This document shows positions 2,021-38,732 of a stretch of DNA of 64,000 nt, piece by piece. The position numbers and the translations under genes are program-made. The notes under the pieces are model-generated. The model was not told where the DNA came from and did no database searches. It saw only the letters and a list, made by a program, of their open reading frames with translations. Each line of letters opens with the position of its first letter. The stretch's first letter is position 1. The stretch is taken from the IMG/VR virus record IMGVR_UViG_3300021964_009390, positions 62,001-126,000 of that record. The stretch is one strand, 5' to 3'.

Positions 2021-2989
2021 ATGAATGTAGGTTTTTTTACACCTGGATTTAACTACCGCGGTACAGGAGTCGCGATATATGATTATGCAAACTACAATGA
2101 AAGTATCTTAGGTAATCAATCGTATATAATATCTTGCGGCACCGGGGCAAGTAGCGACATCCGTCGTAAGTTTGAGGACCGGTTCGGTGACAGAATGCTA
2201 GGGTGTGGTCATTCTAAATCAAAGCTAGAGTCGCATCTGAACGATCATAACATCACTCATCTATACCGGCTTATCGCAGGAACCAAGTGCGAATTCGAAA
2301 ACCCGGATAACCCTAGGGAGCTGAGTACCATGGTCAAGGAGTGTATACATTGTGTTTTCAACGCTAGCGAACCTCATGGTGATGTCTATGCCGCTATATC
2401 AGATCAAGTCAAAGGATATCATGCATCTGTACCGGTAGTACCTCATATGATATCGTTACCCAACGATACACATAATTTGAGAGCAGAACTAAATATACCT
2501 GATACTGCAACAGTATTTGGTGGTTATGGTGGTAAATGTAAATTTAGTATTCAAGCGGCACGAGATGCTGTTTATCAAGTCGCGAAAGCTCGGACTGATA
2601 TATATTTCCTCTTCGCGAATTTTGATAGATTCTGTGAACATTTACCTAACATTATACATGTACCAACTATATACAATGTAGATGATAAAGTGAGTTTCAT
2701 AAACACATGTGACGCGATGCTGTGGGCCCGTAATGATGGAGAAACGTTTGGTATAGCTATTGGTGAATTTTCCTCAAAAAACAAACCGGTGATTGCAAAA
2801 AAATGCGGTAAGTTAGCCCATGCAAACATTTTAAAGAACAAGGGTATATGGTATGAAGGCAAACAGGATTTAATTGATATATTGCACGCGTTTGATAGGT
2901 GCAAATCTGTAACCGGTGACTGGAATGCATATACTGATTATACACCGGAAAAGGTAATAAATATATTTAACAAAGTATTTTTGAAATGA
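2021..2989 (+). CDS. GT-B glycosyltransferase (large-virus type)
   Basis: RGTGVAIYDYA N-terminus; CDAMLWARNDGETFGIAIGEF GT4-like E-x7-E motif. Confidence 0.75.
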   Translation: MNVGFFTPGFNYRGTGVAIYDYANYNESILGNQSYIISCGTGASSDIRRKFEDRFGDRMLGCGHSKSKLESHLNDHNITHLYRLIAGTKCEFENPDNPRELSTMVKECIHCVFNASEPHGDVYAAISDQVKGYHASVPVVPHMISLPNDTHNLRAELNIPDTATVFGGYGGKCKFSIQAARDAVYQVAKARTDIYFLFANFDRFCEHLPNIIHVPTIYNVDDKVSFINTCDAMLWARNDGETFGIAIGEFSSKNKPVIAKKCGKLAHANILKNKGIWYEGKQDLIDILHAFDRCKSVTGDWNAYTDYTPEKVINIFNKVFLK

Positions 2990-3591
2990 TAAACCATGAG
3001 CACAAATGTATTTTTATACATATACCAAAATGTGGTGGGTCTAGTGTTGAACGACATATAGATAACCGAGACTGGTGGGTACATGCCCCGGCGGAGAAAC
3101 ATTTAACCGCCAATGATGCACGGAACAAATATGCGCAATATTGGGATGATTATTTTAAGTTTTCTATAGTACGTAACCCGTATGATATAGAAGTCTCATG
3201 GTACCATTTCAAAAAACACCCATTTATCCATGGACGGGAGATAGGCTTTTCAGAGTTTATCAAAGACGAGAGTATTAACACAGTAGCGAAAATTAGTCAC
3301 GGTCTTACGGACAAAAGATGGGAGAATATTATACCGAGTGTTACCGACTGCTATGAGTATTTGTCTATTGACGATACTATCGCGATGGATTATATCGGTA
3401 AACTCGAAAATATTCGACAAGACTTCAATACAATCTGTGACAAAATAGGGATACCACGGCAACAACTTCTACATGTAAACAAAACAAACCACAAACACTA
3501 CACTGAATACTATGATGATGAAACAAAGCAAATCGTTGCGGAAAAATACGCAAAAGACATTGAGTATTTTGGTTATGAATTTGGAGAATGA
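2986..3591 (+). CDS. Sulfotransferase family 2
   Basis: FIHIPKCGGSS, FSIVRNPYD..VSWY, YIGKLEN, C-terminal HYTEYYDDET..AKDIEYFGY. Confidence 0.9.
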   Translation: MINHEHKCIFIHIPKCGGSSVERHIDNRDWWVHAPAEKHLTANDARNKYAQYWDDYFKFSIVRNPYDIEVSWYHFKKHPFIHGREIGFSEFIKDESINTVAKISHGLTDKRWENIIPSVTDCYEYLSIDDTIAMDYIGKLENIRQDFNTICDKIGIPRQQLLHVNKTNHKHYTEYYDDETKQIVAEKYAKDIEYFGYEFGE

Positions 3592-3594: not shown

Positions 3595-4209
3595 ATGATA
3601 AGTCATAAACATAAATTTGTATTTATATGCGCCCCTAAAACGGGAAGCACTTCAGTATCAAAAGCATTAGATGAATATTGTATTAAATTTTCACCTCGTA
3701 AAAAGCATTTTACATATTCTGAGTATTTGGATAACAAACGGGTTGGTGAAACGGTTAATAAAGATTATTTTTTCTTTGCATTTGTGAGAAATCCATTTGA
3801 TAGACTTGTGTCACAATTCAAATTTACGGGAAAGAAATGGTGGAAGAAAGCAGGACTTTCGCAATCCTCGTTGTGTTTTGAAAATTATGTTAAGCAAATA
3901 GTTGCCTGCAACTTACCATTTTCTGTTCATCGATACAATTCAAAAATAAAATCAGATCAAACAGATAAAGATTGGTCACAATTGCAGTTTCTAAGTGAAG
4001 ACATAGATTTCATCGGAAGATATGAAAACCTCCAAGAAGACTTTAATATTGTGTGCGACAAAATTGGAATTCCAAAACAACAACTTCCACACAAAAATGC
4101 CACAAAACACAAACACTACACCGAATACTACGATGATGAAACTCGTCAACTTGTTGCGGAAAAGTATGCAAAAGACATTGAGTTGTTCGGATACAAATTT
4201 GGAGAATAA
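3595..4209 (+). CDS. Sulfotransferase family 2
   Basis: FICAPKTGSTS, FVRNPFDRLVS, FIGRYENL, shared C-terminus. Confidence 0.9.
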   Translation: MISHKHKFVFICAPKTGSTSVSKALDEYCIKFSPRKKHFTYSEYLDNKRVGETVNKDYFFFAFVRNPFDRLVSQFKFTGKKWWKKAGLSQSSLCFENYVKQIVACNLPFSVHRYNSKIKSDQTDKDWSQLQFLSEDIDFIGRYENLQEDFNIVCDKIGIPKQQLPHKNATKHKHYTEYYDDETRQLVAEKYAKDIELFGYKFGE

Positions 4210-4210
4210 G

Positions 4211-4780
4211 ATGGATAAGAAGACTGCAATATCACTTGGAAATGTATGTACCTCGGCAGTATACGGTTTACGGGAAGGCTTAAGACCATCCAAGAAGGGT
4301 GGGTACAAAACATGTCCTTTTGATCTGATGTGTACAAACATAGATGGTATAATAGATTGTTTAAATACGGATTTTAAATACTTTTGTGATCCCAAATTTC
4401 TGAAAGTAAAAGATCTAGGAACTGAAAATGGTGAAGACCGATTCATGATTAGACATACAAAGTATAAATGGAAATTCAACCACGAATCATTTGCTCCTGG
4501 TGAAGCATATTTGTACGCACGTGAAAACTGGGAAAATGGTGTTTATACGTTTGTAAATAATAATTTCGAGAAACTCGTTGAGAGATACACAAAACGGATT
4601 GATAATTTTAAATATTATTGTGAATCTGATTACTATGTAACTTTCATTTTGCAGTTATGTCGTGAAGAATATTCGGATGGACTTATGGAGCGATTACATG
4701 ATGCAATAAAAACTAGATTTTCAAAATTGGAATATGAGATAAAGGTTATATCAAATGACTACAAGATTAGGAAGAAATAA
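4211..4780 (+). CDS. DUF1796-like (putative papain-like peptidase) protein
   Basis: ISLGNVC...CPFDL...FNHE...RYTKRIDNF pattern; true start is ATG 4211 just after the upstream stop (the ORF-track extension from 4022 is a shadow). Confidence 0.65.
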   Translation: MDKKTAISLGNVCTSAVYGLREGLRPSKKGGYKTCPFDLMCTNIDGIIDCLNTDFKYFCDPKFLKVKDLGTENGEDRFMIRHTKYKWKFNHESFAPGEAYLYARENWENGVYTFVNNNFEKLVERYTKRIDNFKYYCESDYYVTFILQLCREEYSDGLMERLHDAIKTRFSKLEYEIKVISNDYKIRKK

Positions 4781-4892
4781 ACATATAATAATTCATGTTG
4801 CACCACCAAAGACTGACGATGAAACAAAATCTACCGTTGCGGAAAAATTTGCAAAAGACATTGAATATTTCGGATACAAATTTGGAGAATAA
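4755..4892 (+). pseudogene. 45-aa internally deleted sulfotransferase (N-terminal PSB loop fused to constant C-terminus)
   Basis: Translates MTTRLGRNKHIIIHVAPPKT-DDETKSTVAEKFAKDIEYFGYKFGE*; 5' part matches the start of the 5745 gene, 3' part matches the shared sulfotransferase tail. Confidence 0.75.
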
Positions 4893-4895: not shown

Positions 4896-5675
4896 GTGAG
4901 ATATAAGAAGCAGATCGGATATTCCCCTACAAGGACCCACTGGTCCAAGGCGTATTATCATATTGTAATTGATTACCTTGGGGCTCTATATAAATTTATT
5001 GACACAGATTTAACAAATTATAATTTAGTTTTCCATCCATGTTGGAGGAGTAAAAAATTTGCAGAACAGTGGACCAACATTGTTGTACCTGAACTAAAAA
5101 ATTCAGTTGTATATCACAAGAGATTGAAAAATTTAGAAGAATCTATTGTGATTGATTCGAAAATATCAATTGACAGTGATAAAATGCCACATAAACACAA
5201 AGAAAACATTGTTTTATTTTTAAGAAAAAAAGTAAATGATTATCTGATAGGAATAGAAACAAAACAAAATAAAATGCTTTTGATAAAAAGAACAAAAATT
5301 AGGTGTACTAACAACTTTGATGAACTTTTAATTTTATGCAAAAAATATTGTGACAAATTAAATCTTGAACTTGATGTATTTGATGATTCGGAAAATCTTG
5401 GAAGTGTGGGGGAACAATTACAGAGATACAGATCATCAAAAATTGTCATTGGACAGCATGGTGCAGGATTTATTAATTTGCTTGCCTGTCTACGGAACGT
5501 ACATTTTATTGAATTTAAATCAATATGCAGAGGACCCCGTGGGAATAAACAAGATCCAGTGTGCTTTGAGGTAATGGCTAATATATTAGGAATTTCTCAC
5601 CAATGTATACAGAACAACGAAAATCAAGATATTGATTTAAATCAAGTCAATAAATACCTAGAGGAGGTAACATAA
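4896..5675 (+). CDS. Glycosyltransferase family 61 (DUF563)-like
   Basis: YYH near N-terminus; EQLQRYRSSKIVIGQHGAGFINL..HFIEF. Confidence 0.8.
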   Translation: MRYKKQIGYSPTRTHWSKAYYHIVIDYLGALYKFIDTDLTNYNLVFHPCWRSKKFAEQWTNIVVPELKNSVVYHKRLKNLEESIVIDSKISIDSDKMPHKHKENIVLFLRKKVNDYLIGIETKQNKMLLIKRTKIRCTNNFDELLILCKKYCDKLNLELDVFDDSENLGSVGEQLQRYRSSKIVIGQHGAGFINLLACLRNVHFIEFKSICRGPRGNKQDPVCFEVMANILGISHQCIQNNENQDIDLNQVNKYLEEVT

Positions 5676-5744: not shown

Positions 5745-6767
5745 ATGAAATTTCCAATAATGAAAAATAAACATATAATAATTCATGTTGGACCAGCAAA
5801 AACTGGAACATCTGCATTACAATATTTTTTATTAAAAAATCGCGAAGAACTCGAGAAAGCTGGATACTATTATCCGGATCACCGGGTAGATCAAAACGGT
5901 GTAGGTGGAGGTCATGCGAATCCACGTAGATTTAATATTAAAAATATCATAAACAATTTTTTAGAATCAAATTCAAAACATCATACATTAATATTATCAT
6001 CAGAAGACTTCTTCGTAAAGATAAACGAACTCAATAAAATATGCGCAAGTATTAAGTTTGTCTCGTTTTATCGTTGTAGTATTTACCAGTCATTATCCGG
6101 TTATATTCAAAAAATAAAACGTAAAAATCAAACCGATAAATTTAAACGGCACAAAATAGATAGATCGCCTAATGATACCCACCTTGATAATTTGAAAATT
6201 AAAAATATTAATTACACAATAATTCCGTATATGTTCGATTTTGATAACACTTGGTCAATTGTTAATGAATTTTTGAGGTTTATTGATAATAGTAACGTAT
6301 TGAGTCATATGTATGAAAACAAAATAAAAATTGTGAATCCATCATACTGTATAGAGGCAATAGAACTTAAGAGGTTTATTAATAACAATATTAACGATAT
6401 CAACGTTGATAATAATAAATCTACCATACTTGAGTTGGATGTAATACTACAGAAATTTACAGAGGGTGTGAATGATTTTTCTTTTTTAAAAGATGAACAA
6501 TTTGAAGAAAATAAAAAAATAGAAATATTGTTTTTAGAAAATATAATTATAAATTACAAACAACCGCAATTGAAAGTGATTTTAAATCATATGCAAAAAT
6601 CTAAAAATAAAAAATTTATAACACAACAATTATCAAAACAACAAATTGTTAAAATAGTGAAACATATTGCAAATGAGGATATAAACATACTTAAAAATAT
6701 TTTGCCTTATATTTCAAAAGATACGAATAATCCAATATACATAGAGATTAAAAATATTATCGAATGA
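5745..6767 (+). CDS. Sulfotransferase-fold protein
   Basis: IIHVGPAKTGTSALQ, YYP, LILSSEDF; very AT-rich; start could be 5760. Confidence 0.7.
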   Translation: MKFPIMKNKHIIIHVGPAKTGTSALQYFLLKNREELEKAGYYYPDHRVDQNGVGGGHANPRRFNIKNIINNFLESNSKHHTLILSSEDFFVKINELNKICASIKFVSFYRCSIYQSLSGYIQKIKRKNQTDKFKRHKIDRSPNDTHLDNLKIKNINYTIIPYMFDFDNTWSIVNEFLRFIDNSNVLSHMYENKIKIVNPSYCIEAIELKRFINNNINDINVDNNKSTILELDVILQKFTEGVNDFSFLKDEQFEENKKIEILFLENIIINYKQPQLKVILNHMQKSKNKKFITQQLSKQQIVKIVKHIANEDINILKNILPYISKDTNNPIYIEIKNIIE

Positions 6768-27721: not shown

Positions 27722-27722
27722 A

Positions 27723-27887: not shown

Positions 27888-27923
27888 AATTGTATTATCT
27901 TATAATTTGATCTAAAGGACAAC

Positions 27924-28091: not shown

Positions 28092-28105
28092 AACTTTCCT
28101 TTCTA

Positions 28106-28345: not shown

Positions 28346-28351
28346 AAAATG

Positions 28352-28453
28352 ATTATATGAAGAGCTGATGAAATGGACAACTTTTTCTCCCAGAAAAAAT
28401 CAGGTGCGCCAGGGAGAGAAAAAGTTGCAGGTTTGAGCAGTTTTCACTATCAT
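28352..28453. promoter_or_regulatory. Back-to-back divergent early promoters within a 12-bp inverted repeat
   Basis: CAACTTTTTCTC 28378-28389 / GAGAAAAAGTTG 28416-28427; -10 boxes at 28352-28357 (-) and 28448-28453 (+). Confidence 0.8.
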
Positions 28454-28459
28454 GTTAAT

Positions 28460-28579
28460 ATGGAAAGAGAATATTACATAATGGAAGTAGAAGGAGCAGG
28501 ATGTTATTGTTTATGTTATGATGATGTAGATGGTAATAGAGTTGTTGTGGATTGGGATTTAGAGATAAGGGAGGACTAA
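28460..28579 (+). CDS. 39-aa acidic early protein
   Basis: Leaderless ATG; only 3 C in 120 nt. Confidence 0.65.
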   Translation: MEREYYIMEVEGAGCYCLCYDDVDGNRVVVDWDLEIRED

Positions 28580-28642
28580 AAGTTGTCCTTTTTGCTAGGA
28601 GGATTTAAAATAAGATTTTAAATTAGTAAAGAAAGGAAAGTT

Positions 28643-28813
28643 ATGAGAGAAGAATTGAAAAAGATTTTAGTGATTAGTTTGTATGATGGAAGTAATGAGA
28701 TTGATGAAGTGGATGAGGAGATGATGAGAGAGATTGAGAGGAGTAGTGAGAAGTGTAAGAAGGGTGATAAGGTGATTTGGATGGATGAAGAGTTTATGTA
28801 TTTGGAATTGTAA
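28643..28813 (+). CDS. 56-aa acidic early protein encoded without any cytosine (absent from ORF track)
   Basis: MREELKKILVISLYDGSNEIDEVDEEMMREIERSSEKCKKGDKVIWMDEEFMYLEL; promoter TTGTCC(28583)-17-TAAAAT, RBS AGAAAGGAAAGTT. Confidence 0.75.
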   Translation: MREELKKILVISLYDGSNEIDEVDEEMMREIERSSEKCKKGDKVIWMDEEFMYLEL

Positions 28814-28851
28814 AAGTTGTCCTTTTCAAATGATCACCTTATAATTAGAGC

Positions 28852-29067
28852 ATGAAAAGGATTAGAAGTTACAGTTTTGGATATGATATTGACAACATTA
28901 AAGATGTGCAATCTTATGTGATTGACAATTATGATGAAGGAGATTACAACATCCATATTGCTAGAGGAGATGATGTGATGAATTATATGACAATCTTGAG
29001 AGGAGAAGATGAGGAGTTGGATGGATTGATCGACAGTTGTTATGGTGAGGGTGATTTTGAAGAATAA
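28852..29067 (+). CDS. Highly acidic small early protein
   Basis: Leaderless ATG after TTGTCC-17-TATAAT; Asp/Glu-rich. Confidence 0.7.
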   Translation: MKRIRSYSFGYDIDNIKDVQSYVIDNYDEGDYNIHIARGDDVMNYMTILRGEDEELDGLIDSCYGEGDFEE

Positions 29068-29106
29068 AAAGTTGTCCATTTGAGCAGCAGACACTATTAT
29101 CATAAT

Positions 29107-29322
29107 ATGGAAGAAGAAAACAACATATGGGAACAAATGGAAACGCACATGCACGAGAATCTGGGAACGTACGGACTCAAGATGATGGATGCATTTTTAG
29201 ATTTGAAAGAATCAGCTGAAGATTGCGGAATGTGTCCGCAAGACACTCCTGAACGTCAGGAACGATTTGAACAGATGAATGGAGAGGCTCATGCTCCAGG
29301 AAGCAGACAACCATCTGAATAA
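29107..29322 (+). CDS. Small acidic protein with CxxC
   Basis: Leaderless ATG after TTGTCC-17-TATTAT. Confidence 0.65.
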   Translation: MEEENNIWEQMETHMHENLGTYGLKMMDAFLDLKESAEDCGMCPQDTPERQERFEQMNGEAHAPGSRQPSE

Positions 29323-29362
29323 AAAGTTGTCCATTCAAGCAGCAGACGCTATTATATAAACA

Positions 29363-29479
29363 ATGAAGATAAGATCTACGATACGCGCCAAGGCCACTCA
29401 GGCCCACGCACGACACAACAAGACGCTGGATCGTAAGCGCAAACACAGGAAGGATTATAAGTTATGTTCACAATATTAA
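29363..29479 (+). CDS. 38-aa basic peptide (RKRKH motif)
   Basis: ATG 7 nt after TATTAT; MKIRSTIRAKATQAHARHNKTLDRKRKHRKDYKLCSQY. Confidence 0.45.
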   Translation: MKIRSTIRAKATQAHARHNKTLDRKRKHRKDYKLCSQY

Positions 29480-29658
29480 GAGGAAAGACCGCCATCATCG
29501 ACTGTCAAGATCTACAAGCCGCGATACGATTCGTGCAGAGTCTGGAGAGCGGAATGAATCGTCACAAGGATCATTCACCATACACCATCGTCAAGGCGGA
29601 GGATGTGGAACGACCAGGTGTGAAGATCGGAGCACCTGACGCGTTCGTCACAAACTAA
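29464..29658 (+). CDS. Hypothetical protein
   Basis: AAGGA RBS. Confidence 0.55.
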   Translation: MFTILRGKTAIIDCQDLQAAIRFVQSLESGMNRHKDHSPYTIVKAEDVERPGVKIGAPDAFVTN

Positions 29659-29744
29659 AAGTTGACCGTCTGAGCACCAGAGCATACAATTAAGAATAAT
29701 CAGGCAATCAAGCCATCAAACAAAATATAAGGAAAATAACAGTT

Positions 29745-30074
29745 ATGTCAAAAGGAAAAAACACTCGCAAAGCAAAAGTATTTTACACATTACAAGACGC
29801 GTACGGCAAGGACGTGCGCATCGACTTGAACAACTATCGAGTCATCTGCAACAAGACCGGCAAACGCAAGAGCTTCTATCACAAGTACTTGTTCAATCTG
29901 ATCAGTCGCAAGTACGAAAGCAACATCGATCGCTTCAGAACCGAGTATACTAGCAGAGAGGCCGCTCCCAGCAAGAACGAACGACGCGCCAAGCAGCTTC
30001 AGGCACGCATCGATCGTCTGTACAACCAGATTCGAGAGCTCAAAGCCACAAGAAACGAGCTGGTTGTTGACTAA
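29745..30074 (+). CDS. Basic hypothetical protein (C..TG..Y..Y.SREA), related to 40983
   Basis: Promoter 29662-29690, AAGGA RBS, terminator downstream. Confidence 0.7.
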   Translation: MSKGKNTRKAKVFYTLQDAYGKDVRIDLNNYRVICNKTGKRKSFYHKYLFNLISRKYESNIDRFRTEYTSREAAPSKNERRAKQLQARIDRLYNQIRELKATRNELVVD

Positions 30075-30099
30075 ATTTCTTCCATAACTGATCCTAACC

Positions 30100-30138
30100 A
30101 GGGGCTGGTGAATAGAGTAGCCAGCCCCTCTTGTTTTT
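30100..30138 (+). terminator. Rho-independent terminator
   Basis: AGGGGCTGG...CCAGCCCCT followed by CTTGTTTTT. Confidence 0.7.
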
Positions 30139-30176
30139 AAGTTGACATCACCCATGAAACATCATACAATAAACAT

Positions 30177-30806
30177 ATGAAAACGATAACCACACTAGTC
30201 ACTCTGATGATCGTGTCAGTTGCATCAGCAGCGATCATCGACCGAAACAGGGACGGCATCCCTGACACCACTCGTGAATGGAACGTGCCAGAGTTCACCG
30301 ATCAGAACATTCATGGATTCACACCCAGCGACTCGTTGGCAGGAGCGTTACGAATGGCAGCACGCAACTCGCTGGAGCCTGATCCGTTCGGTGCCGACAC
30401 AACCAACACCAGAACACGACCTTTGACTCCTGATCAGAAACGATTGAACGAGCAGCTGTTGGCCAGATACAAACAAGAGTTAGAAGCTCATCTGAACAAC
30501 ATCACTCCTGAACCAGATGAGGACACGCTGCAGGCTCAGATCGCTCGATTGAACCAAGAGTATGTGAACCGAGCTGCAGAACTTGACCGAGTGATTCAAC
30601 TGGATGGTACAGTGGTGACACGTGACAACACTGACGCCAACTCGACTGGTCAATCATCCGCTTACGAATCAGATTCAGAATCGAATCAACTGGCCATGGC
30701 CGCCATTGGAGGTGGAGGCTTGCTTGCCGGACTCGCCAGTGGTGTTGTGGCATGGAGAAGGCGTCGAGAAACTGACCCGGCTGCTCTAGAAACAACCACG
30801 CTCTGA
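30177..30806 (+). CDS. Exported protein with DxNxDG Ca-binding-like loop and C-terminal TM plus RRRR anchor
   Basis: Signal peptide ..VASA; DRNRDGIPD; AMAAIGGGGLLAGLASGVVAWRRRR. Confidence 0.7.
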   Translation: MKTITTLVTLMIVSVASAAIIDRNRDGIPDTTREWNVPEFTDQNIHGFTPSDSLAGALRMAARNSLEPDPFGADTTNTRTRPLTPDQKRLNEQLLARYKQELEAHLNNITPEPDEDTLQAQIARLNQEYVNRAAELDRVIQLDGTVVTRDNTDANSTGQSSAYESDSESNQLAMAAIGGGGLLAGLASGVVAWRRRRETDPAALETTTL

Positions 30807-31024
30807 GACCACAACACTCTCTGAGACTCAACCTGGTCTAGACCACAGGGTATGAAACTTTGTGATATACAGGCCAGGTTTGGTGTGTTCGAAAATGTGC
30901 ATGGGAAAATTTTTTTGCGCGATTTTTTGAGGCATGTATATAAGCGGTTTTGCCTGGTCCACGACCACCACGACCTGAGCGTAGCGAATGTAGATTATTG
31001 CATCTCGGAAACATAAATAGCCAC

Positions 31025-31360
31025 ATGACACAACCCATGATCGAATCTATCGGACTAGTCGCAGGTGCCACTGGTCTGATCGCGTGGATACCACAGTTAC
31101 AGACAGTGTGGTTCAAGCGAGAACACCGAGGTGTGAATCGAGGCACTCTGATGATCATATTCACAGCGTTGTGCATGTGGTGTGTGTACGGAGTGTTACG
31201 AGAGGCCTGGGCTGTATGTGCGAGCAACGCATGCAGCGGCATGCTGGTGGCCACGATATTCGCCCGTGTCACCTGGCTCAGATCACAGCAAACAGCACCA
31301 GATCCGGACATCCAACAGTACGAACAACACATCGTGAGCACCGACTCATGGGAGACATGA
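31025..31360 (+). CDS. SemiSWEET/PQ-loop (MtN3) transporter
   Basis: IGLVAG...IAWIPQ; G(V)N..T; MWCVYG; SN; three TM helices; TAAATA-5nt-ATG. Confidence 0.8.
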   Translation: MTQPMIESIGLVAGATGLIAWIPQLQTVWFKREHRGVNRGTLMIIFTALCMWCVYGVLREAWAVCASNACSGMLVATIFARVTWLRSQQTAPDPDIQQYEQHIVSTDSWET

Positions 31361-31425
31361 CACCTGGTCGGCGGCAGGCTGAAGGTTGCTACGCAACGTT
31401 GCCGATGACGCGCGGGGGTTGACGA

Positions 31426-32016
31426 ATGCTGAGCCATGAACATAAGTATATTTTTCTCCATGTACCCAAGTGCGGAGGTTCTTCTGTAGTTGCAGCACTG
31501 TCGAGACACCCACATAGCAAAAAATTCAAAACTGGGCACCCGGTGCTGGCTAGTTACTTCGATGAGTTCGGTGATAATGTCCGGGATTACTTTATTTTCT
31601 CCATTGTGAGGAATCCGTTCGCAAGAGCGGTCAGTGCGTTCAAGTACCTTCAAAAAGGAGGAAGTAAAAGTTCATCAGACATAAGAGACCGAGATCAATT
31701 TGACATGAAAGGCTTGGATTTTAATAAATTTGTATTGAAATATTTTGACCAAAAAACACCTCTACATTTTCGTTCTCAAGCGGCATTTATAGGTGAATAT
31801 TTTAAACATGTAGACTATATTGGTAAACTCGAAAATATACAGTTGGATTTTGATAATATTTGTGACAAAATTGGAATCTCAAGAAAAAAACTTCCACATG
31901 TGAATAAAACCAATCACTTGCATTACACCGAGTATTATGATGATGAAACTCGTGAACTTGTTACAGAACGATACGCAAGAGATATTGAATTGTTTGGTTA
32001 CGAATTTGGTGAATGA
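31426..32016 (+). CDS. Sulfotransferase family 2
   Basis: FLHVPKCGGSS, VRNPFARAVS, HFRSQ, shared tail. Confidence 0.9.
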   Translation: MLSHEHKYIFLHVPKCGGSSVVAALSRHPHSKKFKTGHPVLASYFDEFGDNVRDYFIFSIVRNPFARAVSAFKYLQKGGSKSSSDIRDRDQFDMKGLDFNKFVLKYFDQKTPLHFRSQAAFIGEYFKHVDYIGKLENIQLDFDNICDKIGISRKKLPHVNKTNHLHYTEYYDDETRELVTERYARDIELFGYEFGE

Positions 32017-32630
32017 TATATGGACCTCGATGTATGAAGAAAACAATTTATATAAGGATGCCAAGATGTGGATCTTTTACAGTGGTCAGTCTTTGTGAAA
32101 AAAATAATATTAAATATTACGGTGGTAGAGATATGGGTTTTTGGAACTATAATACAAACCATACAAAGAATACTTCACCGAAACTGTACAAATGCGTAGA
32201 AAACTATGTAAATGAAAAAGTGTATAATGAAAGTTTCATCTTTACAACTGTAAGGAATCCGTATTCCCGTGCAGTTTCAATGTATAAACACGAATCATGG
32301 GACTCCGCGAGAACTTTCAGCGACTTTTGTAATAAACTTATAAGAGATGAATACCCTTCAAAATTTGCAAAATGGCATAGCTCCACCTTGACAGAGCATA
32401 TTGTCGATAAGGATATTCTCAAAGTTGATTTTGTAGTCAAACTTGAAAATTTTCAACAAGACTTCGATACGGTCTGCGACAAAATAGGGATACCACGTCA
32501 ACAACTTCCACATGAAAACAAATCAAAACACAAACACTACACCGAATACTATGATGAAGAAACAAAACAAATTGTTGCGGAACGATACGCACGTGACATC
32601 GAGTTGTTCGGGTATGAATTTGATAAATAA
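32013..32630 (+). CDS. Sulfotransferase family 2
   Basis: YIRMPRCGS, VRNPYSRAVS, shared tail. Confidence 0.88.
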   Translation: MIYGPRCMKKTIYIRMPRCGSFTVVSLCEKNNIKYYGGRDMGFWNYNTNHTKNTSPKLYKCVENYVNEKVYNESFIFTTVRNPYSRAVSMYKHESWDSARTFSDFCNKLIRDEYPSKFAKWHSSTLTEHIVDKDILKVDFVVKLENFQQDFDTVCDKIGIPRQQLPHENKSKHKHYTEYYDEETKQIVAERYARDIELFGYEFDK

Positions 32631-32635
32631 CTAAC

Positions 32636-33364
32636 ATGAAAGCTATAGTGCAGAGTTGCGACAGATATCACAGTATGGCTCAAAACATGCTGGTTCAATA
32701 CGAAAAATTATGGCCATCTAATCCTTTTACATTCAGGGTCCCATGGAATGAAAAATATCCAGAAGTTATAGAAAATCAATTTGGAAGTAAAATAGAATTA
32801 ATTAACGCTGGAATTAAATTTAAGCAAACATTTCATGCACTAACTAAAGATCTTGATGACAATGACTGGGTTTATTGGTGTATTGATGACAGATACCTAA
32901 TAAGCATTGAAGAAGGGGAAGCTAATCAAGTTCTTAATTTTGTAGAATCAATTAAAAACCCTAACATCATTAATGTGTGCTTTCATTTTGTCAGGTATAT
33001 AAAAGATTCTGCAAATTGTATACAAAGAGAAGGCTCAGGTGTAGAAATTTATTTTGAAAACTTGAGATTTATACAACACAAATCTTTTATCAACAATTGG
33101 TTGCACCAATTTTTTAGAGTTAAAGCGTTAAGAGAGTTCTGGAGGCACATAGAAGAGCCACCTCAATATCAAGCCATACAAATGGATTACAGCACAAAAC
33201 CTTTAAATGGAATTTCTTTAACTTTAGACCATAATATATCCAGGTACGGAGAAAGCACGGAGGGGGGAACGATCACAAAAAATTGTCAAAATAGTTGTAT
33301 TGAAAATAATATATCAATCCCAAAAATTTTTTTATCAAAAAAACAAAAAACAATTATTATTTAA
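32636..33364 (+). CDS. Putative GT-A-like glycosyltransferase
   Basis: VQSCDRY, WP, VYWCIDDRY (DxD-like); AT-rich cargo gene. Confidence 0.5.
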   Translation: MKAIVQSCDRYHSMAQNMLVQYEKLWPSNPFTFRVPWNEKYPEVIENQFGSKIELINAGIKFKQTFHALTKDLDDNDWVYWCIDDRYLISIEEGEANQVLNFVESIKNPNIINVCFHFVRYIKDSANCIQREGSGVEIYFENLRFIQHKSFINNWLHQFFRVKALREFWRHIEEPPQYQAIQMDYSTKPLNGISLTLDHNISRYGESTEGGTITKNCQNSCIENNISIPKIFLSKKQKTIII

Positions 33365-33367
33365 AAT

Positions 33368-33400
33368 CAGGACATTGAGTATTTTGGGTACGAATTCGAA
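33368..33400 (+). repeat. Orphan copy of the sulfotransferase 3' constant sequence
   Basis: 30/33 identical to 34006-34038 (encodes QDIE.FGYEFE) but intergenic. Confidence 0.8.
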
Positions 33401-33462
33401 CAAACGTCCAAAAAAGAATGGTAATACAGTAATGGATCAGGCTAAATAATTATATTATTAAT

Positions 33463-34044
33463 ATGATCAACCACAAACACAAATTTATTTTTATTCACAT
33501 ACCAAGAACTGGTGGGACTAGTATAGAGCAACAGTTTAGTTATAATGGAGATCGTTCTGGAGACGGAAAAAAACATTGGAATCTAGATCAATACAAAGAT
33601 GTATTATCCAACGAACAATTTGATAATTATTTTAAATTCACTTTCATCAGGAACCCCTGGGATATTGTAATTTCTAAATATATGGATAGAGGTTGGTATT
33701 CTAGCCCCATCAAAGGAAGGGGCGGTAAAATTGGATATTATTCCGGGCAAAAGTTAAGTTATTTTTTAAATCATTATCAACCCGCCAGACATGAGTATGG
33801 AGATAGTTTTTTTGATTATTTCAACCCCAAACAAATTGATTTTGTTGGCCGTTTTGAAGATAGAAGGAAAGGTTTAAATTTTATATCAAAAAAAATCGGC
33901 ATTAATCTTAATCCTCAAACTAAATCTAGATCCAATTCTGACAAAAAACACTACACCGAATACTACGATGATGAGACAAGACAAATGGTTGCGGAAAGAT
34001 ATGCACAGGACATTGAGTTGTTCGGGTACGAATTCGAATCGTGA
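33463..34044 (+). CDS. Sulfotransferase family 2
   Basis: FIHIPRTGGTS, IRNPWD..IS, VGRFE, shared tail. Confidence 0.9.
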   Translation: MINHKHKFIFIHIPRTGGTSIEQQFSYNGDRSGDGKKHWNLDQYKDVLSNEQFDNYFKFTFIRNPWDIVISKYMDRGWYSSPIKGRGGKIGYYSGQKLSYFLNHYQPARHEYGDSFFDYFNPKQIDFVGRFEDRRKGLNFISKKIGINLNPQTKSRSNSDKKHYTEYYDDETRQMVAERYAQDIELFGYEFES

Positions 34045-34856
34045 ATATAAAAAATATTAATACAATTAAGTTATTTTCTGATCCACTGTTCGATGCGCAT
34101 TTTTCTGTCGATCCTGGTTCTAAATTTTTAATATTTAAATCAATAGATTTTAAAACGGTAAGTGCTACATTAAAAGTAGATCCGGTGAGTCTGGTTAAAT
34201 TTTTAAACGATATATGTATGGAGATGTATAGAAATGGTAAAACTAATGGTATACCTCGAGATGTGTCGATAAATTTACATGATCATTATTTTTGTGCGGA
34301 AACTATAAGAGATATATATTCAGGTATTATTTCTGACCTGCTAGCGGACAATAGTGAATGGAGTACAAACGAAATTGTTTCATTTGGGTTTTTATGCGGT
34401 AACACTAAACCTCAAAGATTGAAATACATTGAAATGGGTAAAAGTTTTTCTCAACTAAACTACATATCGACAAAAAAATACAATAGGTACTCCAAAGATA
34501 CAGACGGCTTCACAAGCGTGATAAAATTAAAAAAAGATTATAAGTATTTTATCGATTTAACCGGTCATAGCTACAGTACTAAAACATATCAATTTCTAGC
34601 ATCCAAACGCGTATACTTCACTTCTAAACATAATGAGATTTTAGACTGGGAAGCAAATCACTTAAAACCCTGGGAAAATTACATCCCGGTTGAAGATGAT
34701 CTTTCAGATCTTATAAGTAAATATCAAACAATAGAATCAAACCCGGTATTATATAAAAAAATTATTAAAAATAATACCAATTTGATAGCAAATCAACTCT
34801 CTCATAAATTAATGTTACAGCATTTAATAAAGACTATTTCAGCGTACATTATATAA
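34041..34856 (+). CDS. Glycosyltransferase family 90 (CAP10-like)
   Basis: YKYFIDLTGHSYS....L, LKPWENYIPV..DLSDL. Confidence 0.75.
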   Translation: MNIKNINTIKLFSDPLFDAHFSVDPGSKFLIFKSIDFKTVSATLKVDPVSLVKFLNDICMEMYRNGKTNGIPRDVSINLHDHYFCAETIRDIYSGIISDLLADNSEWSTNEIVSFGFLCGNTKPQRLKYIEMGKSFSQLNYISTKKYNRYSKDTDGFTSVIKLKKDYKYFIDLTGHSYSTKTYQFLASKRVYFTSKHNEILDWEANHLKPWENYIPVEDDLSDLISKYQTIESNPVLYKKIIKNNTNLIANQLSHKLMLQHLIKTISAYII

Positions 34857-34903
34857 ATATAAGGAAGTTGAAAAATAATCAATTGTAGTTAATTATATAT
34901 ATT

Positions 34904-34975
34904 ATGAGAGTAGCTGTAACTGGAACTGCGTGTGTAGGTAAAAGCACATTTGTGAATGATTTTTTAAAAAATTGA
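34904..34975 (+). pseudogene. Truncated P-loop kinase/ATPase N-terminus
   Basis: MRVAVTGTACVGKSTFVNDFLKN*: intact Walker A then stop. Confidence 0.65.
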
Positions 34976-34976
34976 T

Positions 34977-35612
34977 ATGAACATCAATTTATATGTGTCA
35001 TACTATAAGGATAAAATAAACGAGAGGAATCTGGAGCTAGAGCAGTGCCTGCTCGGTAATCTAACCAATGCCGCGGTAGACAACGTATATCTGCTAGCTG
35101 AAAACACCCCACCAAAACGGTTTCGGACTAACAGTAAAGTCACTGTCATACCACATAAACGACCCACGTTCACCAATTTTTTCAACATTGTGAACGACAC
35201 AACAGGTGCAAAGGATCTGAACATAGTCGTGAACAGTGACATCTACCTACCGGACAACATCGCGGACATACACCCTCATGTGAGTATGGACACAGTAGCA
35301 TGCATGTCCCGGTGGGAGTTACAATCTGATGGTTCGCTTGTACAGGCACGCGGACCACGTGGTGACAGCCAGGACGCGTGGATGTGGAGAGGCAAGATTC
35401 GCGAGGTGGATTACAGTGACTTCAACCTGGGTGTACTGGGTTGTGACAATCGAATAGCCTGGGAGTTCATGAACGTGGGTTATCGATTGATAAATCCATG
35501 CGAGACATTCAAAATAGCCCATGTACACAACTCCAAAGTCAGAAATTACAGATACAATGATCTGAATGACAAAGTGTCTGGACCATACCAGTTTGTGTCA
35601 CATAGCGCATGA
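34977..35612 (+). CDS. Putative glycosyltransferase-like protein
   Basis: VVNSDIY, SRWE, DSQDAW, LG..GCDNRI, HVH. Confidence 0.6.
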   Translation: MNINLYVSYYKDKINERNLELEQCLLGNLTNAAVDNVYLLAENTPPKRFRTNSKVTVIPHKRPTFTNFFNIVNDTTGAKDLNIVVNSDIYLPDNIADIHPHVSMDTVACMSRWELQSDGSLVQARGPRGDSQDAWMWRGKIREVDYSDFNLGVLGCDNRIAWEFMNVGYRLINPCETFKIAHVHNSKVRNYRYNDLNDKVSGPYQFVSHSA

Positions 35613-36199
35613 TAAGTCACGAGCATAAATTTCTTTTCATTCATGTGCCACGGACAAGTGGTAGCAGCATCGAGATACAGTTTAAATACAACGATGCAGG
35701 TATGTGGATGGTAAACTATGATGGTCGTAAGCATTGGACATTGAACCAATGGAAAGAACATTTAGAACCGGAAGTATTTGAAACATATTTCAAATTCACA
35801 ATTGTCCGGAATCCTTGGGACCGGGTAATCAGCAAATATTGTACACGTAATGAGTTTGGACCGATCGGACAACCGGCCGGAAAATCACTGAAATATTTTC
35901 TAGACAATTACAAAACTCCCGGGAACGAACATGGAGAGACCTTGATTGATTATTTCGATCCGGAGCAGATGGATTACATCGGTAGATTTGAATCTAGAGA
36001 GGACACATTAACATATGTGTCACAGAAAATTGGTGTAGAAATAGACAATAGCTACAAGCTTAGACCAGTACAAGCCACGATCAAGCAACAAAACGATAAC
36101 CATCATTACACCGAATACTATGATGAAGAAACAAAACAAATTGTTGCGGAACGATACGCACGTGACATCGAGTTGTTCGGGTATGAATTTGGTGACTAA
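35609..36199 (+). CDS. Sulfotransferase family 2
   Basis: FIHVPRTSGSS, VRNPWDRVIS, IGRFE, shared tail. Confidence 0.9.
   Translation: MISHEHKFLFIHVPRTSGSSIEIQFKYNDAGMWMVNYDGRKHWTLNQWKEHLEPEVFETYFKFTIVRNPWDRVISKYCTRNEFGPIGQPAGKSLKYFLDNYKTPGNEHGETLIDYFDPEQMDYIGRFESREDTLTYVSQKIGVEIDNSYKLRPVQATIKQQNDNHHYTEYYDEETKQIVAERYARDIELFGYEFGD
36107..36191 (+). repeat. 85-nt perfect direct repeat of 32538-32622
   Basis: TACACCGAATACTATGATGAAG...GGGTATGAATTTG identical in both copies. Confidence 0.9.
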
Positions 36200-36246
36200 T
36201 TATATCTGACTCGGTTCAAAAGTAACAGTTTAGAATAAATATATAT

Positions 36247-36507
36247 ATGGAAGGTCAGGATTACTTGATCGCTGTGTTAGGAGCAGTGATCAGCATATTA
36301 GGGTGGTTTGTTCGCCGCGAAGTGTTGCGTGTGGAACACAAACTACAATTACTCAAAGAACAAGTGAAAGAGCTACAGATAGAGTGGCAAATAAATGACA
36401 CACGGGACCGCGAGCGATGGAGATGGATAGATAAAAACATGGAGGACCGGAGACAGGATATCCGGAAATTGTTTGATAGTATCTATGAACTTACAAAAAA
36501 CAAATAA
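36247..36507 (+). CDS. TM plus coiled-coil late protein (holin-like topology)
   Basis: N-terminal TM helix; TAAATA-5nt-ATG. Confidence 0.6.
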   Translation: MEGQDYLIAVLGAVISILGWFVRREVLRVEHKLQLLKEQVKELQIEWQINDTRDRERWRWIDKNMEDRRQDIRKLFDSIYELTKNK

Positions 36508-36533
36508 ATTTGGGGAATAAAGATATATAAATT

Positions 36534-36842
36534 ATGAAACATATATTAAAACATTTGAAAGATTTGACGATATTCTCGGACGAGGTGGATATAATGTATG
36601 GGCGAACAGACACATTGCATTTACTAGATTATGTGAACGAACTGAGCGAGCATAAAGAACTCATCATGACATTACTACAAGACCATATCAAGCGACTGGA
36701 ATTTTGTGAGTACAAATACAGAGGCATGGAAGAATCTAAATATACAGAAGAGAAACAACAGTACATACAACTATACAAAATAATGGGTGTACTGGTTGGT
36801 GTACCAGTTGTAGATGAATTTTTGAACAACTGGAAGAATTAA
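36534..36842 (+). CDS. Hypothetical protein
   Basis: ORF. Confidence 0.6.
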   Translation: MKHILKHLKDLTIFSDEVDIMYGRTDTLHLLDYVNELSEHKELIMTLLQDHIKRLEFCEYKYRGMEESKYTEEKQQYIQLYKIMGVLVGVPVVDEFLNNWKN

Positions 36843-36892
36843 TTAACCGGTTCCACCGGTTGATATGTCCGGGACAATATATACATATTGGT

Positions 36893-37859: not shown

Positions 37860-38732
37860 ATGAAACTCAAGAGAAAAATTTTGATAATGGGGCTCCCGGG
37901 TGCAGGTAAAACTACACTGGCGGAATTGTTGGTACAAAAGCTATGCGCAGTGTGGTTCAATGCGGACGCTGTTCGTCAAGAGATCAGCAAAGATCTTGGT
38001 TTCACAGCAAATGATAGACTAGAGCATTCACGACGCATGGGTAAAATGTGTGAATTCGCTAGTAAATTCGGAACCTGGGCCATAGCCGATTTTGTATGTC
38101 CCACCAATAAAGCTAGAGAGCTGTTCGATGCAGACTACATAATCTGGGTGGATCGAATCAAGGAAGGTAGATTTGAAGATACAAACAAGATGTTCGAACC
38201 ACCAGCGAATGCAGATCTTGTGTTGAGAGACGGTACACCACAAGAGTGGTTGGAACAGTCCATGGATCTTTTGAAACCGGAGCTATGGGACAATCAAGCT
38301 CCAACCGCGTTGTTGATTGGCCGTTATCAACCATTCCATAAAGGACATAAAACACTAGTGGCCGAAGCCATCAAACGTACCGGGCAATGCTGCATAGCTC
38401 TTAGAGACGTGGGGGGAAAGGATGATAGTAATCCATATGACTTTCAGCAAGTGAAACGTGAGATACACGCGGCATGTCCGGAGTTTGGTGACAAAATAAA
38501 AGTTGTCGAGCTCCCCAACATCACCGATGTATTTTACGGTAGAGGTGTGGGTTACAACATAGAACAACTGGAACTAGACAAGAGCATCCAGGAAATATCG
38601 GCCACCAAGATTCGCAAAGGTGAGATAGACCAACAAGGTAACAAATTGAACAAAAACACAGGTGGTCACAATCCGTTCACTGGAGAAGGTCTCCAAGTTG
38701 ACACACAAAACACAGACCGACGTTACGAGTGA
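37860..38732 (+). CDS. cysC: Adenylyl-sulfate kinase (CysC-like) fused to HIGH nucleotidyltransferase
   Basis: MGLPGAGKTT, NADAVR...DLGFT..DR, FVCP, FEPP; second domain IGRYQPFHKGH ... ISATKIR. Confidence 0.8.
   Translation: MKLKRKILIMGLPGAGKTTLAELLVQKLCAVWFNADAVRQEISKDLGFTANDRLEHSRRMGKMCEFASKFGTWAIADFVCPTNKARELFDADYIIWVDRIKEGRFEDTNKMFEPPANADLVLRDGTPQEWLEQSMDLLKPELWDNQAPTALLIGRYQPFHKGHKTLVAEAIKRTGQCCIALRDVGGKDDSNPYDFQQVKREIHAACPEFGDKIKVVELPNITDVFYGRGVGYNIEQLELDKSIQEISATKIRKGEIDQQGNKLNKNTGGHNPFTGEGLQVDTQNTDRRYE

What the first reader, a model, noticed from the sequence alone, without database searches (positions are those of the whole stretch)
31426..36199. Sulfotransferase constant 3' end as a built-in recombination site for cassette shuffling
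Seen: six Sulfotransfer_2 genes (2986, 3595, 31426, 32013, 33463, 35609) have divergent middles but share a near-identical DNA tail encoding HYTEYYD.ET...VAE.YA.DIE.FGY.F. 32538-32622 and 36107-36191 are identical over 85 nt. Orphan tail copies lie outside intact genes at 4815-4892 and 33368-33400. The tail is often followed within a few nt by an AT-rich cargo gene (DUF1796-like, GT61, GT-A-like, GT90), sometimes with stop/start overlap. Inference: the tail works like an att or constant segment, so homologous recombination swaps 'cargo + variable sulfotransferase 5' part' units. That would give an integrase-free combinatorial glycan-modification array at two loci 28 kb apart.
Basis: partly seen in the sequence, partly recalled or inferred. 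Interest (0 to 1): 0.75.

Follow-up and report, generated by a model that had tools for sequence, protein, structure and literature searches.

The report
Phage sulfotransferase paralogues sharing conserved tail
An uncultured 222-kb estuarine phage carries eight sulfotransferase gene copies whose look-alike 3' ends are simply the most conserved part of the enzyme (with a ribosome-binding site for the next gene built in), occasionally overwritten by gene conversion, and there is no sign that they are a purpose-built site for shuffling gene cassettes.

Summary
Six Sulfotransfer_2 genes lie in the window and two more 20 kb upstream. They have divergent bodies (22-54% aa) and a shared 31-codon tail. 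The D and F tails are identical over 85 nt, and both orphan tails exist.

The tail belongs to the Pfam domain and folds as three confident helices. It is conserved in about 130 homologues from 77 unrelated viral contigs. Eight tails of the same subfamily, each drawn from a different contig, are as alike (82% nt; synonymous-codon identity 0.64) as this genome's eight (82%; 0.67). So the tails are not homogenised across the genome; purifying selection explains the similarity.

Only D-F, and weakly A-H, show tail-limited gene conversion. The orphan tails are deletion relics. Other phages, and this one, also carry orphan heads and head-tail minigenes.

The last tail codons (GGAGAA-stop) act as the Shine-Dalgarno sequence for the tightly following gene. 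That explains the tail-cargo abutment.

In the nearest syntenic relative the whole array is replaced. The left edge of the replacement is a conserved terminator-promoter cassette (PeSL-like), not a tail; the right edge is less clear.

Gene order is identical in four independent samples of the same strain. The finding is ordinary, with modest interest.

The parts
2986..3591 (+). ST2 gene A (201 aa)
   Evidence: PF03567 E 1.3e-14. Its last 184 nt are 86% identical to D and its tail is 89-91% identical to H.
3595..4209 (+). ST2 gene B (204 aa). Its end, GGAGAATAA, lies 1 nt before the ATG of the DUF1796 gene.
4211..4780 (+). DUF1796-like 'cargo' gene, GC 33%
   Evidence: PF08795 E 3.4e-10; GC
4755..4892 (+). 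Orphan tail 1: a 45-codon head-tail minigene. The head of a 5745-type gene is fused in frame to the last 26 codons of an ST2 tail. Its GGAG serves the GTG start of GT61.
   Evidence: (D14, D2)
4896..5675 (+). GT61-like glycosyltransferase, GC 31%
   Evidence: PF04577 E 7.7e-14
5745..6767 (+). 340-aa protein with a P-loop-like start (KHIIIHVGPAKTGTS) and no Pfam hit, GC 26%. Its first codons recur in orphan 1.
30100..30170 (+). Stem-loop plus U-run, followed by TTGACA-17-TACAAT: a terminator-promoter cassette at the left edge of the variable island. It is conserved in relative L168 (2319-2390).
30177..36843 (+). Variable island (array 2). Relative L168 has instead a 3.7-kb block with a methyltransferase, a Peptidase_C92 and a Sulfotransfer_4 gene.
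31426..32016 (+). ST2 gene C (196 aa); its stop overlaps the start of D
32013..32630 (+). ST2 gene D (205 aa), a three-part mosaic: its own head, a pre-tail of about 100 nt that is about 88% identical to A, and a tail identical to F
32538..32622 (+). 85-nt tract identical to 36107-36191 (gene-conversion tract)
   Evidence: In run X1 it forms a single unitig whose depth is about the sum of the two copies.
32636..33364 (+). 242-aa 'cargo' gene of unknown family, GC 31%. A 61% identical homologue lies inside the ST2 array of L056.
33368..33400 (+). Orphan tail 2: 11 codons (QDIEYFGYEFE), 91% identical to E's tail, with the stop codon lost
   Evidence: (D7)
33463..34044 (+). ST2 gene E (193 aa); its stop overlaps the start of GT90
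34041..34856 (+). GT90-like glycosyltransferase, GC 29%. A 60% identical homologue in L022 follows a different ST2 gene.
34977..35612 (+). 211-aa gene of unknown family, GC 46%. A 54% identical homologue lies at the far end of L044's array.
35609..36199 (+). ST2 gene F (196 aa). Its tail was probably overwritten by a D-type tail.
36107..36191 (+). Second copy of the 85-nt identical tract

Best explanation
The genes are paralogous PAPS-dependent sulfotransferases (Pfam Sulfotransfer_2). They sit in glycan-modification islands of an uncultured 222-kb estuarine or marine phage. The N-terminal P-loop, the RNP..R..S block and the 31-residue C-terminal tail are the conserved core of the enzyme. The middle, presumably the acceptor-binding part, diversifies.

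The tail DNA looks alike mainly because the peptide is under strong purifying selection throughout this viral subfamily. It is also rich in two-fold-degenerate codons. Its final codons (GGA GAA stop) double as the Shine-Dalgarno sequence for the next gene, which starts within a few nucleotides.

Because the tail is the only stretch with enough identity, it is occasionally the substrate of homology-limited gene conversion. The clearest case is F, whose tail was overwritten by a D-type tail. Unequal exchange may also occur there.

The orphan tails are relics of sulfotransferase genes removed by illegitimate deletion or replacement. In at least one case the extreme 3' end was kept together with the next gene's ribosome-binding site. 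In the one relative where both flanks can be compared, the whole island is replaced with a terminator-promoter cassette (PeSL-like) at its left edge, not a tail.

Shown: family membership, fold, family-wide conservation, the lack of genome-wide homogenisation, the D-F tract, the relics, the SD bias and the island boundary. Inferred: PAPS binding by the tail, the direction of conversion, and how the relics arose.
For: - The Pfam match runs to profile position 252/252, so the tail lies inside the domain.
- The AF2 model has pLDDT 89.7. The tail forms helices 167-170, 173-182 and 184-190 with pLDDT 82-95. All top PDB matches are sulfotransferases.
- The tail motif occurs in 130 genes of 77 contigs. 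It is also recognisable in most of the 86 homologues that the search patterns could not have selected.
- Synonymous-codon identity per block is similar within the genome and against other genomes: 0.67/0.73/0.59 versus 0.61/0.65/0.58.
- Random sets of eight same-subfamily tails from eight different contigs have nt identity 0.824 +/- 0.018 and synonymous identity 0.641 +/- 0.041. This genome's eight have 0.816 and 0.671.
- In three other metagenomes, depth over the tail is 25-30 times the phage's own depth. Tail-like DNA at >=90% identity is therefore widespread in those samples.
- D-F share 85/85 nt and 28/29 identical synonymous codons.
- The penultimate Gly codon is GGA in 88/108 genes, against 36% elsewhere. 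In 89/130 genes the next start lies within -5 to +9 nt.
- Relics of both kinds occur in other phages, and an orphan head lies in this genome at 43267-43362(-).
- The island is replaced in L168 next to a conserved terminator-promoter.
- The same junctions appear in four samples and four long contigs.
Against: - Within-genome synonymous identity is slightly above the baseline (0.67 vs 0.64; excess not significant). Some older conversion cannot be excluded.
- Tail >=95% nt with head <50% aa occurs in 3/98 within-contig pairs and 3/8159 between-contig pairs. Tail-limited exchange therefore recurs.
- The DUF1796 gene is flanked by two tail ends that are identical over 28 nt, including the TAAGATG junction (family D2). 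This is also what a tail-mediated duplication or insertion would leave.
- The contact of the tail with PAPS is inferred, not shown.
- The relatives are distant (54-84% aa), so breakpoints inside the arrays cannot be mapped to the nucleotide.
Confidence: 0.7

Rival explanations
1. One reading: the tail is maintained as a recombination site (att-like constant segment). Homologous recombination at tails, within the genome or between co-infecting phages, moves 'cargo + sulfotransferase 5' part' units and builds combinatorial arrays.
For: The D-F conversion tract is confined to the tail. F's tail is discordant with that of its L044 orthologue. Array content and order differ between related contigs, and cargo homologues (54-61% aa) sit in other arrays next to different ST2 genes. 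DUF1796 is flanked by directly repeated tail ends. Tail DNA at >=90% identity is abundant in the same waters, so it could serve as a shared homology arm.
Against: The tails are no more alike within the genome than between genomes. The tail is a folded part of the enzyme. Similarity blocks do not start at one fixed point. The orphans have different internal breakpoints and are matched by orphan heads. The proposed unit 'unk34977 + F head' is not kept in L044. The left edge of the island replacement is a terminator-promoter cassette. No credible deletion or circle joint was seen, and the order is constant in four samples.
Confidence: 0.15
2. The identical D and F tails and the orphan tails are assembly artefacts, from collapsed or chimeric repeats.
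For: The unitigs of run X1 break at the 85-nt repeat, so the graph alone does not fix the links.
Against: An independent assembly of the likely source run (X1) covers all flanks with 0 differences. It gives one 85-nt unitig at 37.8x, about equal to 21x + 18x, the depths of the contigs flanking the two copies. Contigs from three other samples span C>D, cargo>orphan 2>E and E>GT90 with 0 differences. Four long contigs carry D and F with the same neighbours. An 85-nt repeat is spanned by ordinary 150-nt reads.
Confidence: 0.03
3. The tail's nucleotide sequence is itself the selected object, as an RNA-level element for translational coupling or mRNA processing across the operon, rather than the peptide.
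For: There is a strong GGA bias that creates GGAG at the end of the tail, and the downstream start follows tightly. At least one relic (orphan 1, 4755-4892) keeps its extreme 3' end directly upstream of the next gene's start.
Against: This holds only for the last ~10 nt. Elsewhere in the tail, synonymous sites are close to the codon-usage expectation (0.64 vs ~0.5), while the peptide is 84-87% conserved. F and orphan 2 lack a closely following gene.
Confidence: 0.1

Closest known systems
PeSL-mediated modular shuffling in T4-type phages (Arbiol et al. 2010, PMC2839356; Comeau et al. 2014, PMC4122927)
   Same: Short repeated sequences in hyperplastic regions of large phages act as points of homologous exchange without an integrase. 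This window has at least 16 promoter-like repeats (AAAAGTTG..N..TAYAAT). One terminator-promoter copy sits exactly at the island's left boundary shared with relative L168.
   Different: The PeSL is non-coding and regulatory. No mini-circles were seen or could be tested, and it was not tested whether this phage is T4-type.
Recombination at conserved motifs of T-even tail-fibre adhesin genes (Tetart et al. 1998, as cited and discussed in PMC3157838)
   Same: [quoted passage not shown] The conserved sequence is there for protein reasons and is used for recombination incidentally.
   Different: In that system recombinants were produced in crosses and changed host range. Here only one conversion tract (D-F) is documented, and no swap of a variable part has been shown.
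Concerted evolution or gene conversion among paralogues in multigene families (general knowledge)
   Same: An identical tract lies inside otherwise divergent paralogues, bounded by the limits of homology (D-F).
   Different: There is no family-wide homogenisation. The eight tails are as diverged as tails from unrelated phages.
Integron attC cassette arrays (general knowledge)
   Same: Arrays of small, same-strand, tightly packed genes are separated by a recurring sequence.
   Different: No integrase was found in the arrays. The recurring sequence is a translated part of an enzyme domain, not an imperfect palindrome recombination site.

Membership tests
Pfam PF03567 Sulfotransfer_2 (PAPS-dependent sulfotransferase) | Full-length profile match above the gathering score | tested here: met
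   All six window genes score 55-75 bits against a 22-bit cut-off, covering profile positions 4-252 of 252. G and H also pass.
Pfam PF03567 Sulfotransfer_2 (PAPS-dependent sulfotransferase) | N-terminal 5'-phosphosulfate-binding loop (PKxG..S/T) and the RNP..R..S 3'-phosphate block | tested here: met
   The loop reads IPKCGGSS, APKTGSTS or VPRTSGSS. R62, N63 and S70 are invariant. Assigning these motifs to PAPS binding rests on established knowledge of sulfotransferase structures.
Pfam PF03567 Sulfotransfer_2 (PAPS-dependent sulfotransferase) | Sulfotransferase fold | tested here: met
   The AF2 model has pLDDT 89.7. The top 50 Foldseek PDB matches are all sulfotransferases, with TM 0.5-0.6.
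Pfam PF03567 Sulfotransfer_2 (PAPS-dependent sulfotransferase) | Sulfate transfer from PAPS to an acceptor | not testable with these tools
   Needs an enzyme assay. The acceptor is unknown.
Site-specific cassette system (att or attC type) | A cognate integrase or recombinase at the array | tested here: not met
   No recombinase family was found among the array genes scanned.
Site-specific cassette system (att or attC type) | The recurring site is a dedicated recombination sequence, not a functional part of a gene product | tested here: not met
   The tail lies inside the Pfam domain, is folded with high confidence, and is conserved as a peptide in unrelated phages.
Site-specific cassette system (att or attC type) | Cassettes found in other orders or contexts with junctions at the site | tested here: inconclusive
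   Cargo homologues occur in other arrays with other neighbours. At 54-61% aa identity the junctions cannot be placed. Strain-level copies show a single order.
Concerted evolution by gene conversion | A tract of identity bounded by divergent sequence in paralogues | tested here: met
   D-F share 85/85 nt while their heads are 22% aa identical. No between-contig pair with head <50% reaches 99% among 8159 pairs.
Concerted evolution by gene conversion | Paralogues within a genome are more alike, synonymous sites included, than homologues between genomes | tested here: not met
   Within the genome, nt identity is 0.816 and synonymous identity 0.671. Random sets from different contigs give 0.824 and 0.641. 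The fractions of random sets at or above the observed values are 0.68 and 0.23.
PeSL-type modular shuffling | A composite terminator plus sigma-70-like promoter, repeated through a hyperplastic region | tested here: met
   The stem-loop has -19.9 kcal/mol (z -3.1) and a U-run, followed by TTGACA-17-TACAAT at 30100-30170. At least 16 promoter-like repeats lie between 12.5 and 30.2 kb.
PeSL-type modular shuffling | Replacements between relatives bounded by the motif | tested here: inconclusive
   The left boundary against L168 lies exactly at the conserved cassette. At the right boundary L168 has a promoter, but the window shows only a weak palindrome. Only one relative was informative.
PeSL-type modular shuffling | Mini-circles formed by exchange between repeats | not testable with these tools
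   Only assembled contigs of the runs were available.

The most novel reading that the evidence does not exclude
The tail of this sulfotransferase subfamily is about 82% identical in DNA across dozens of otherwise unrelated marine phages, and it is abundant in the same water samples. It could act as a community-wide homology arm. Occasional tail-limited exchanges, within a genome and between co-infecting phages, would then re-pair sulfotransferase heads with downstream glycosyltransferase genes. That would be an integrase-free route to combinatorial diversity of phage-encoded sulfated glycans.
Probability: 0.12. Interest if true: 0.6.

Novelty: new member of a known kind. Interest (0 to 1): 0.3.

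Why it matters
The result shows how a striking 'constant segment' in a gene array can be explained without a special recombination device. The explanation combines enzyme-core conservation, an embedded ribosome-binding site and rare gene conversion. It also gives a usable control: compare paralogue tails with tails from unrelated genomes.

The context has some interest of its own. This uncultured jumbo phage, and many IMG/VR contigs, carry arrays of up to eight Sulfotransfer_2 genes interleaved with glycosyltransferases, next to an APS-kinase-like gene and a pyrophosphatase. This points to phage-directed synthesis or remodelling of sulfated glycans in marine hosts. The four literature searches run here turned up no description of such arrays.

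Tried and rejected
- Megablast of both loci against 50,697 deposited phage genomes gave no match. The sulfotransferase has only four distant tblastn hits there.
- A search for relatives through the DnaB-like gene next to locus 1 found nothing. Locus 1 therefore could not be compared across genomes.
- The metagenome-contig scan found no relative closer than 84-88% aa in the anchor gene. Nucleotide-level breakpoint mapping inside the arrays was impossible.
- The first synonymous-site test used head-derived codon usage as the null and suggested a clear excess in tails (0.66 vs 0.48). I rejected this as evidence for homogenisation. Between-genome controls gave 0.58-0.65 and matched random sets gave 0.64.
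- The first family set was ascertained with patterns taken from the tail itself. I re-did the analysis with all whole-protein HMM hits.
- The joints reported by read laying (31455>32528, 32589>33371 and others) were rejected as deletions. Each has a side shorter than 30 nt, and they read as intact tails or whole genes of other organisms.
- A profile search of PDB sequences gave only marginal hits, so the fold search was used instead.
- Four literature searches were run: two on phage sulfotransferases or phage glycan islands, one on PeSL shuffling and one on hypervariable phage glycan islands. None turned up a description of these arrays.

Full report
CONTEXT. The window is bases 62001-126000 of a 222,461-bp IMG/VR virus record that CheckV rates as complete. 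The record comes from an estuary metagenome, and near-identical sequence occurs in other estuary and marine runs. The genome has 39% GC. It encodes ribonucleotide reductase and a DnaB-like helicase. It also carries many sigma-70-like promoter repeats of the form AAAAGTTG..N..TAYAAT. No deposited phage genome matches it at the DNA level.

OBSERVATION. A genome-wide nhmmer search with a tail profile finds eight intact tail-bearing genes. Six are in the window (A 2986, B 3595, C 31426, D 32013, E 33463, F 35609). Two more, G and H, lie at genome 41166-42393 on the minus strand. The same search finds the two orphan tails.

The proteins are 22-54% identical in the first 150 aligned positions. All end in HYTEYYD[DE]ET..V.E.YA.DIE.FGY.F. 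D and F are identical over 85 nt.

Orphan 1 is part of a 45-codon ORF (4755-4892). It joins the first codons of a 5745-type gene (41 nt, 93% identical) in frame to the last 26 codons of a tail. Orphan 2 (33368-33400) is 11 codons of an E-like tail without its stop. The downstream genes start -4 to +5 nt from the stop in six of the eight cases, and most have low GC. 'Near-identical' holds only for D-F; the mean tail identity is 82%.

WHAT THE TAIL IS. The Pfam alignment runs to the last profile position, so the tail lies inside the domain. An AlphaFold2 model of C, built on 45 homologues, has pLDDT 89.7. The tail folds into three short helices with pLDDT 82-95. Every top PDB match is a PAPS-dependent sulfotransferase.

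A scan of IMG/VR found 183 viral stretches encoding relatives, of which 77 loci were kept. A whole-protein HMM found 207 homologues in them, often in arrays of up to eight per 20 kb. The tail motif is nearly invariant in 130 of these genes. The scan patterns came from the tail itself, so I checked the 86 homologues that match neither pattern. Most still have a recognisable tail (..Y.EYY..ET..IV...Y..DI..F.Y.F), though a more diverged one. This genome's eight genes all belong to the conserved-tail subfamily.

IS THE DNA HOMOGENISED WITHIN THE GENOME? Against a null built from head codon usage, identical residues in tails share the same codon more often than expected (0.66 vs 0.48). In heads they do not (0.46 vs 0.45). 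This excess is not specific to the genome.

Block by block, within-genome values (0.67, 0.73, 0.59) are close to those against genes of other contigs (0.61, 0.65, 0.58). For the decisive control I drew random sets of eight same-subfamily tails, each from a different contig, with heads below 50% identical. These sets have nt identity 0.824 +/- 0.018 and synonymous-codon identity 0.641 +/- 0.041. This genome's eight have 0.816 and 0.671. Of the random sets, 68% and 23% reach the observed values. Without F, the synonymous value falls to 0.651.

The tails here are therefore as diverged from one another as tails of unrelated phages. Their likeness comes from purifying selection on an 84-87% conserved peptide rich in two-fold-degenerate codons. 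In agreement, three other metagenomes show 25-30 times the phage's own depth over 32400-32600 at >=90% identity. That depth comes from many other organisms' tails.

RECOMBINATION THAT DID HAPPEN. D-F is a clear exception, with 85/85 nt and 28/29 synonymous codons identical while the heads are 22% identical. No between-contig pair with heads below 50% reaches 99% among 8159 pairs.

The tract begins where D-F homology begins and ends 8 nt before the stop. D is a three-part mosaic. Upstream of the tail it is about 88% identical to A for about 100 nt; in the tail it equals F.

The orthologue of F in the related contig L044 (61% aa) has a tail only 79% identical to F's. The D/F-type tail is 92-93% identical to the tail of a neighbouring L044 gene. 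F was therefore probably the recipient. A-H (24/29 codons) may be an older event.

Across all contigs, pairs with heads below 50% and tails at or above 95% make up 3/98 within-contig pairs and 3/8159 between-contig pairs. Tail-limited conversion thus recurs but is rare. DNA similarity blocks between the paralogues start anywhere from -114 to +3 nt relative to the tail start. They follow the graded protein conservation rather than a fixed site.

RELICS. In 83 sources (1.5 Mb), besides about 177 intact genes, there are about 7 distinct orphan tails and about 5 orphan heads in short ORFs. There are also head-tail minigenes (L068, L048) and a 219-aa unrelated protein ending in the last 13 tail residues (L089). 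This genome also has an orphan head directly upstream of a DUF6492 gene (genome 43267-43362, minus strand). The relic breakpoints differ from case to case, which is the pattern of illegitimate deletion or replacement of array members.

One reason for retaining an extreme 3' end is apparent. In the family, the penultimate Gly codon is GGA in 88/108 genes against 36% elsewhere. This gives GGAGAA-stop, a Shine-Dalgarno sequence. The next gene starts within -5 to +9 nt in 89/130 cases. Orphan 1 supplies exactly this site to the GTG start of GT61.

HOW THE ARRAYS TURN OVER. The closest contig that is syntenic on both sides is L168 (84% aa in the anchor gene 37860-38732). It matches the window up to 30074 and again from 36860. 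Between these points it has 3.7 kb with a methyltransferase, a Peptidase_C92 and a Sulfotransfer_4 gene, and no Sulfotransfer_2.

The left boundary is a conserved stem-loop with a U-run, followed by a near-consensus promoter. This is present in both genomes, with compensated stem differences. That is the composite terminator-promoter ('PeSL') described as the exchange point in T4-type hyperplastic regions (PMC2839356, PMC4122927). The right boundary is less clear.

Contig L044 has, at the same position, a different Sulfotransfer_2 array. The F orthologue comes first and the homologue of 34977-35612 comes last. Homologues of the cargo genes 32636 (61%), GT90 (60%) and 34977 (54%) sit in other arrays beside different sulfotransferases. 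The arrays are thus reshuffled over long times.

At strain level nothing moves. Contigs from four samples span C>D, cargo>orphan 2>E, E>GT90 and unk>F without a difference. Four long contigs also carry D and F with the same neighbours.

ARTEFACT CHECK. In the likely source run, the 85-nt repeat is a single unitig at 37.8x, about the sum of its flanks (21x and 18x). All flanks are reproduced exactly. The identity is real, and a single pass through the 3.6-kb loop fits the depths. The joints reported by the tool have sides under 30 nt and read as other organisms' genes.

WIDER LOCUS. The phage encodes a large glycan toolkit.
- In the window: GT1-type enzymes, a Sulfotransfer_3 gene (1160-1945) and GT61 and GT90.
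- Next to array 2: an APS-kinase-like gene.
- A weaker Sulfotransfer_2-like gene at 49868-50569 (-).
- Upstream of the window: GT25, GT47-like, GT10, WbqC, PIG-L, DegT, a sugar N-formyltransferase, a methyltransferase and an inorganic pyrophosphatase. These surround G and H.

VERDICT. The att-like 'built-in recombination site' reading is not supported. The weaker statement, that the conserved tail is occasionally used for homologous gene conversion, is supported. The case is a new example of known processes: paralogue diversification around a conserved enzyme core, homology-limited conversion, gene decay, and turnover of a hyperplastic region whose left edge in the one informative relative is a regulatory cassette.

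Noticed in passing
window 12519-30170 (+), plus 27889-27925 and 28352-28386 (-), and 52433-52465: There are at least 16 copies of a promoter-like repeat, AAAAGTTG(C/T)..about 20 nt..TA(T/C)AAT. At least the copy at 30100-30170 directly follows a stem-loop terminator (the only one checked). The repeats are dense upstream of small genes and resemble PeSL cassettes of T4-type phages. Relative L168 has the same motif at equivalent places.
   Followed up: partly
window 32400-32600 in runs X3-X5: Depth over the sulfotransferase tail is 25-30 times the phage's own depth at >=90% identity. DNA almost identical to this tail therefore belongs to many more abundant organisms in the same waters.
   Followed up: partly
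L248 (genome 30001-50000), especially 5946-18934: A third, larger glycan cluster lies outside the window. It holds an amidohydrolase, an ATP-grasp enzyme, WbqC, a PIG-L deacetylase, GT25, GT47-like, a GT10 fucosyltransferase, two ST2 genes (G, H), DUF6492, a LOG-like protein, an inorganic pyrophosphatase, a DegT aminotransferase, a methyltransferase and a sugar N-formyltransferase.
   Followed up: partly
L248 13267-13362 (-) = genome 43267-43362: An orphan sulfotransferase head (MISHKHKCIFIHIPRCGGTSIEINMCDKI*) lies directly upstream of the DUF6492 gene. It is the mirror image of the orphan tails.
   Followed up: yes
L089 16711-17368: A 219-aa protein with no sulfotransferase head ends in AKDIEYFGYEFGE. 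A foreign gene appears to be fused in frame to the last 13 codons of a sulfotransferase tail.
   Followed up: no
window 37860-38732: A P-loop kinase (APS_kinase domain, residues 7-87) with a cytidylyltransferase-like C-terminal part has more than 590 relatives in IMG/VR and in metagenome contigs. Deposited Xylella, Xanthomonas and Stenotrophomonas phages split it into two annotations, 'kinase' plus another protein. Its role in PAPS supply is not established.
   Followed up: partly
window 30177-31443: Two genes at the start of array 2 have 52-56% GC in a 39% GC genome. JGI's gene caller places a minus-strand gene (30838-31443) there that overlaps the true start of sulfotransferase C, and it calls C as only 157 aa.
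   Followed up: no
window 49677-49812, inside ORF 48539-49867: Six to seven tandem 18-nt repeats encode (V/I)E(K)(P/I)VE units in a 442-aa protein. That protein has a weak Rz-like spanin hit.
   Followed up: no
window 45927-46360 (ORF 45920-46735, -): An internal 206-nt direct repeat (72% identical, spacing 228 nt) lies within one gene.
   Followed up: no
window 49868-50569 (-) and 50566-52389 (-): A further, weak Sulfotransfer_2-like gene (E 3e-6, no conserved tail) lies next to a 607-aa protein of unknown family. That protein has distant paralogues elsewhere in the genome.
   Followed up: no
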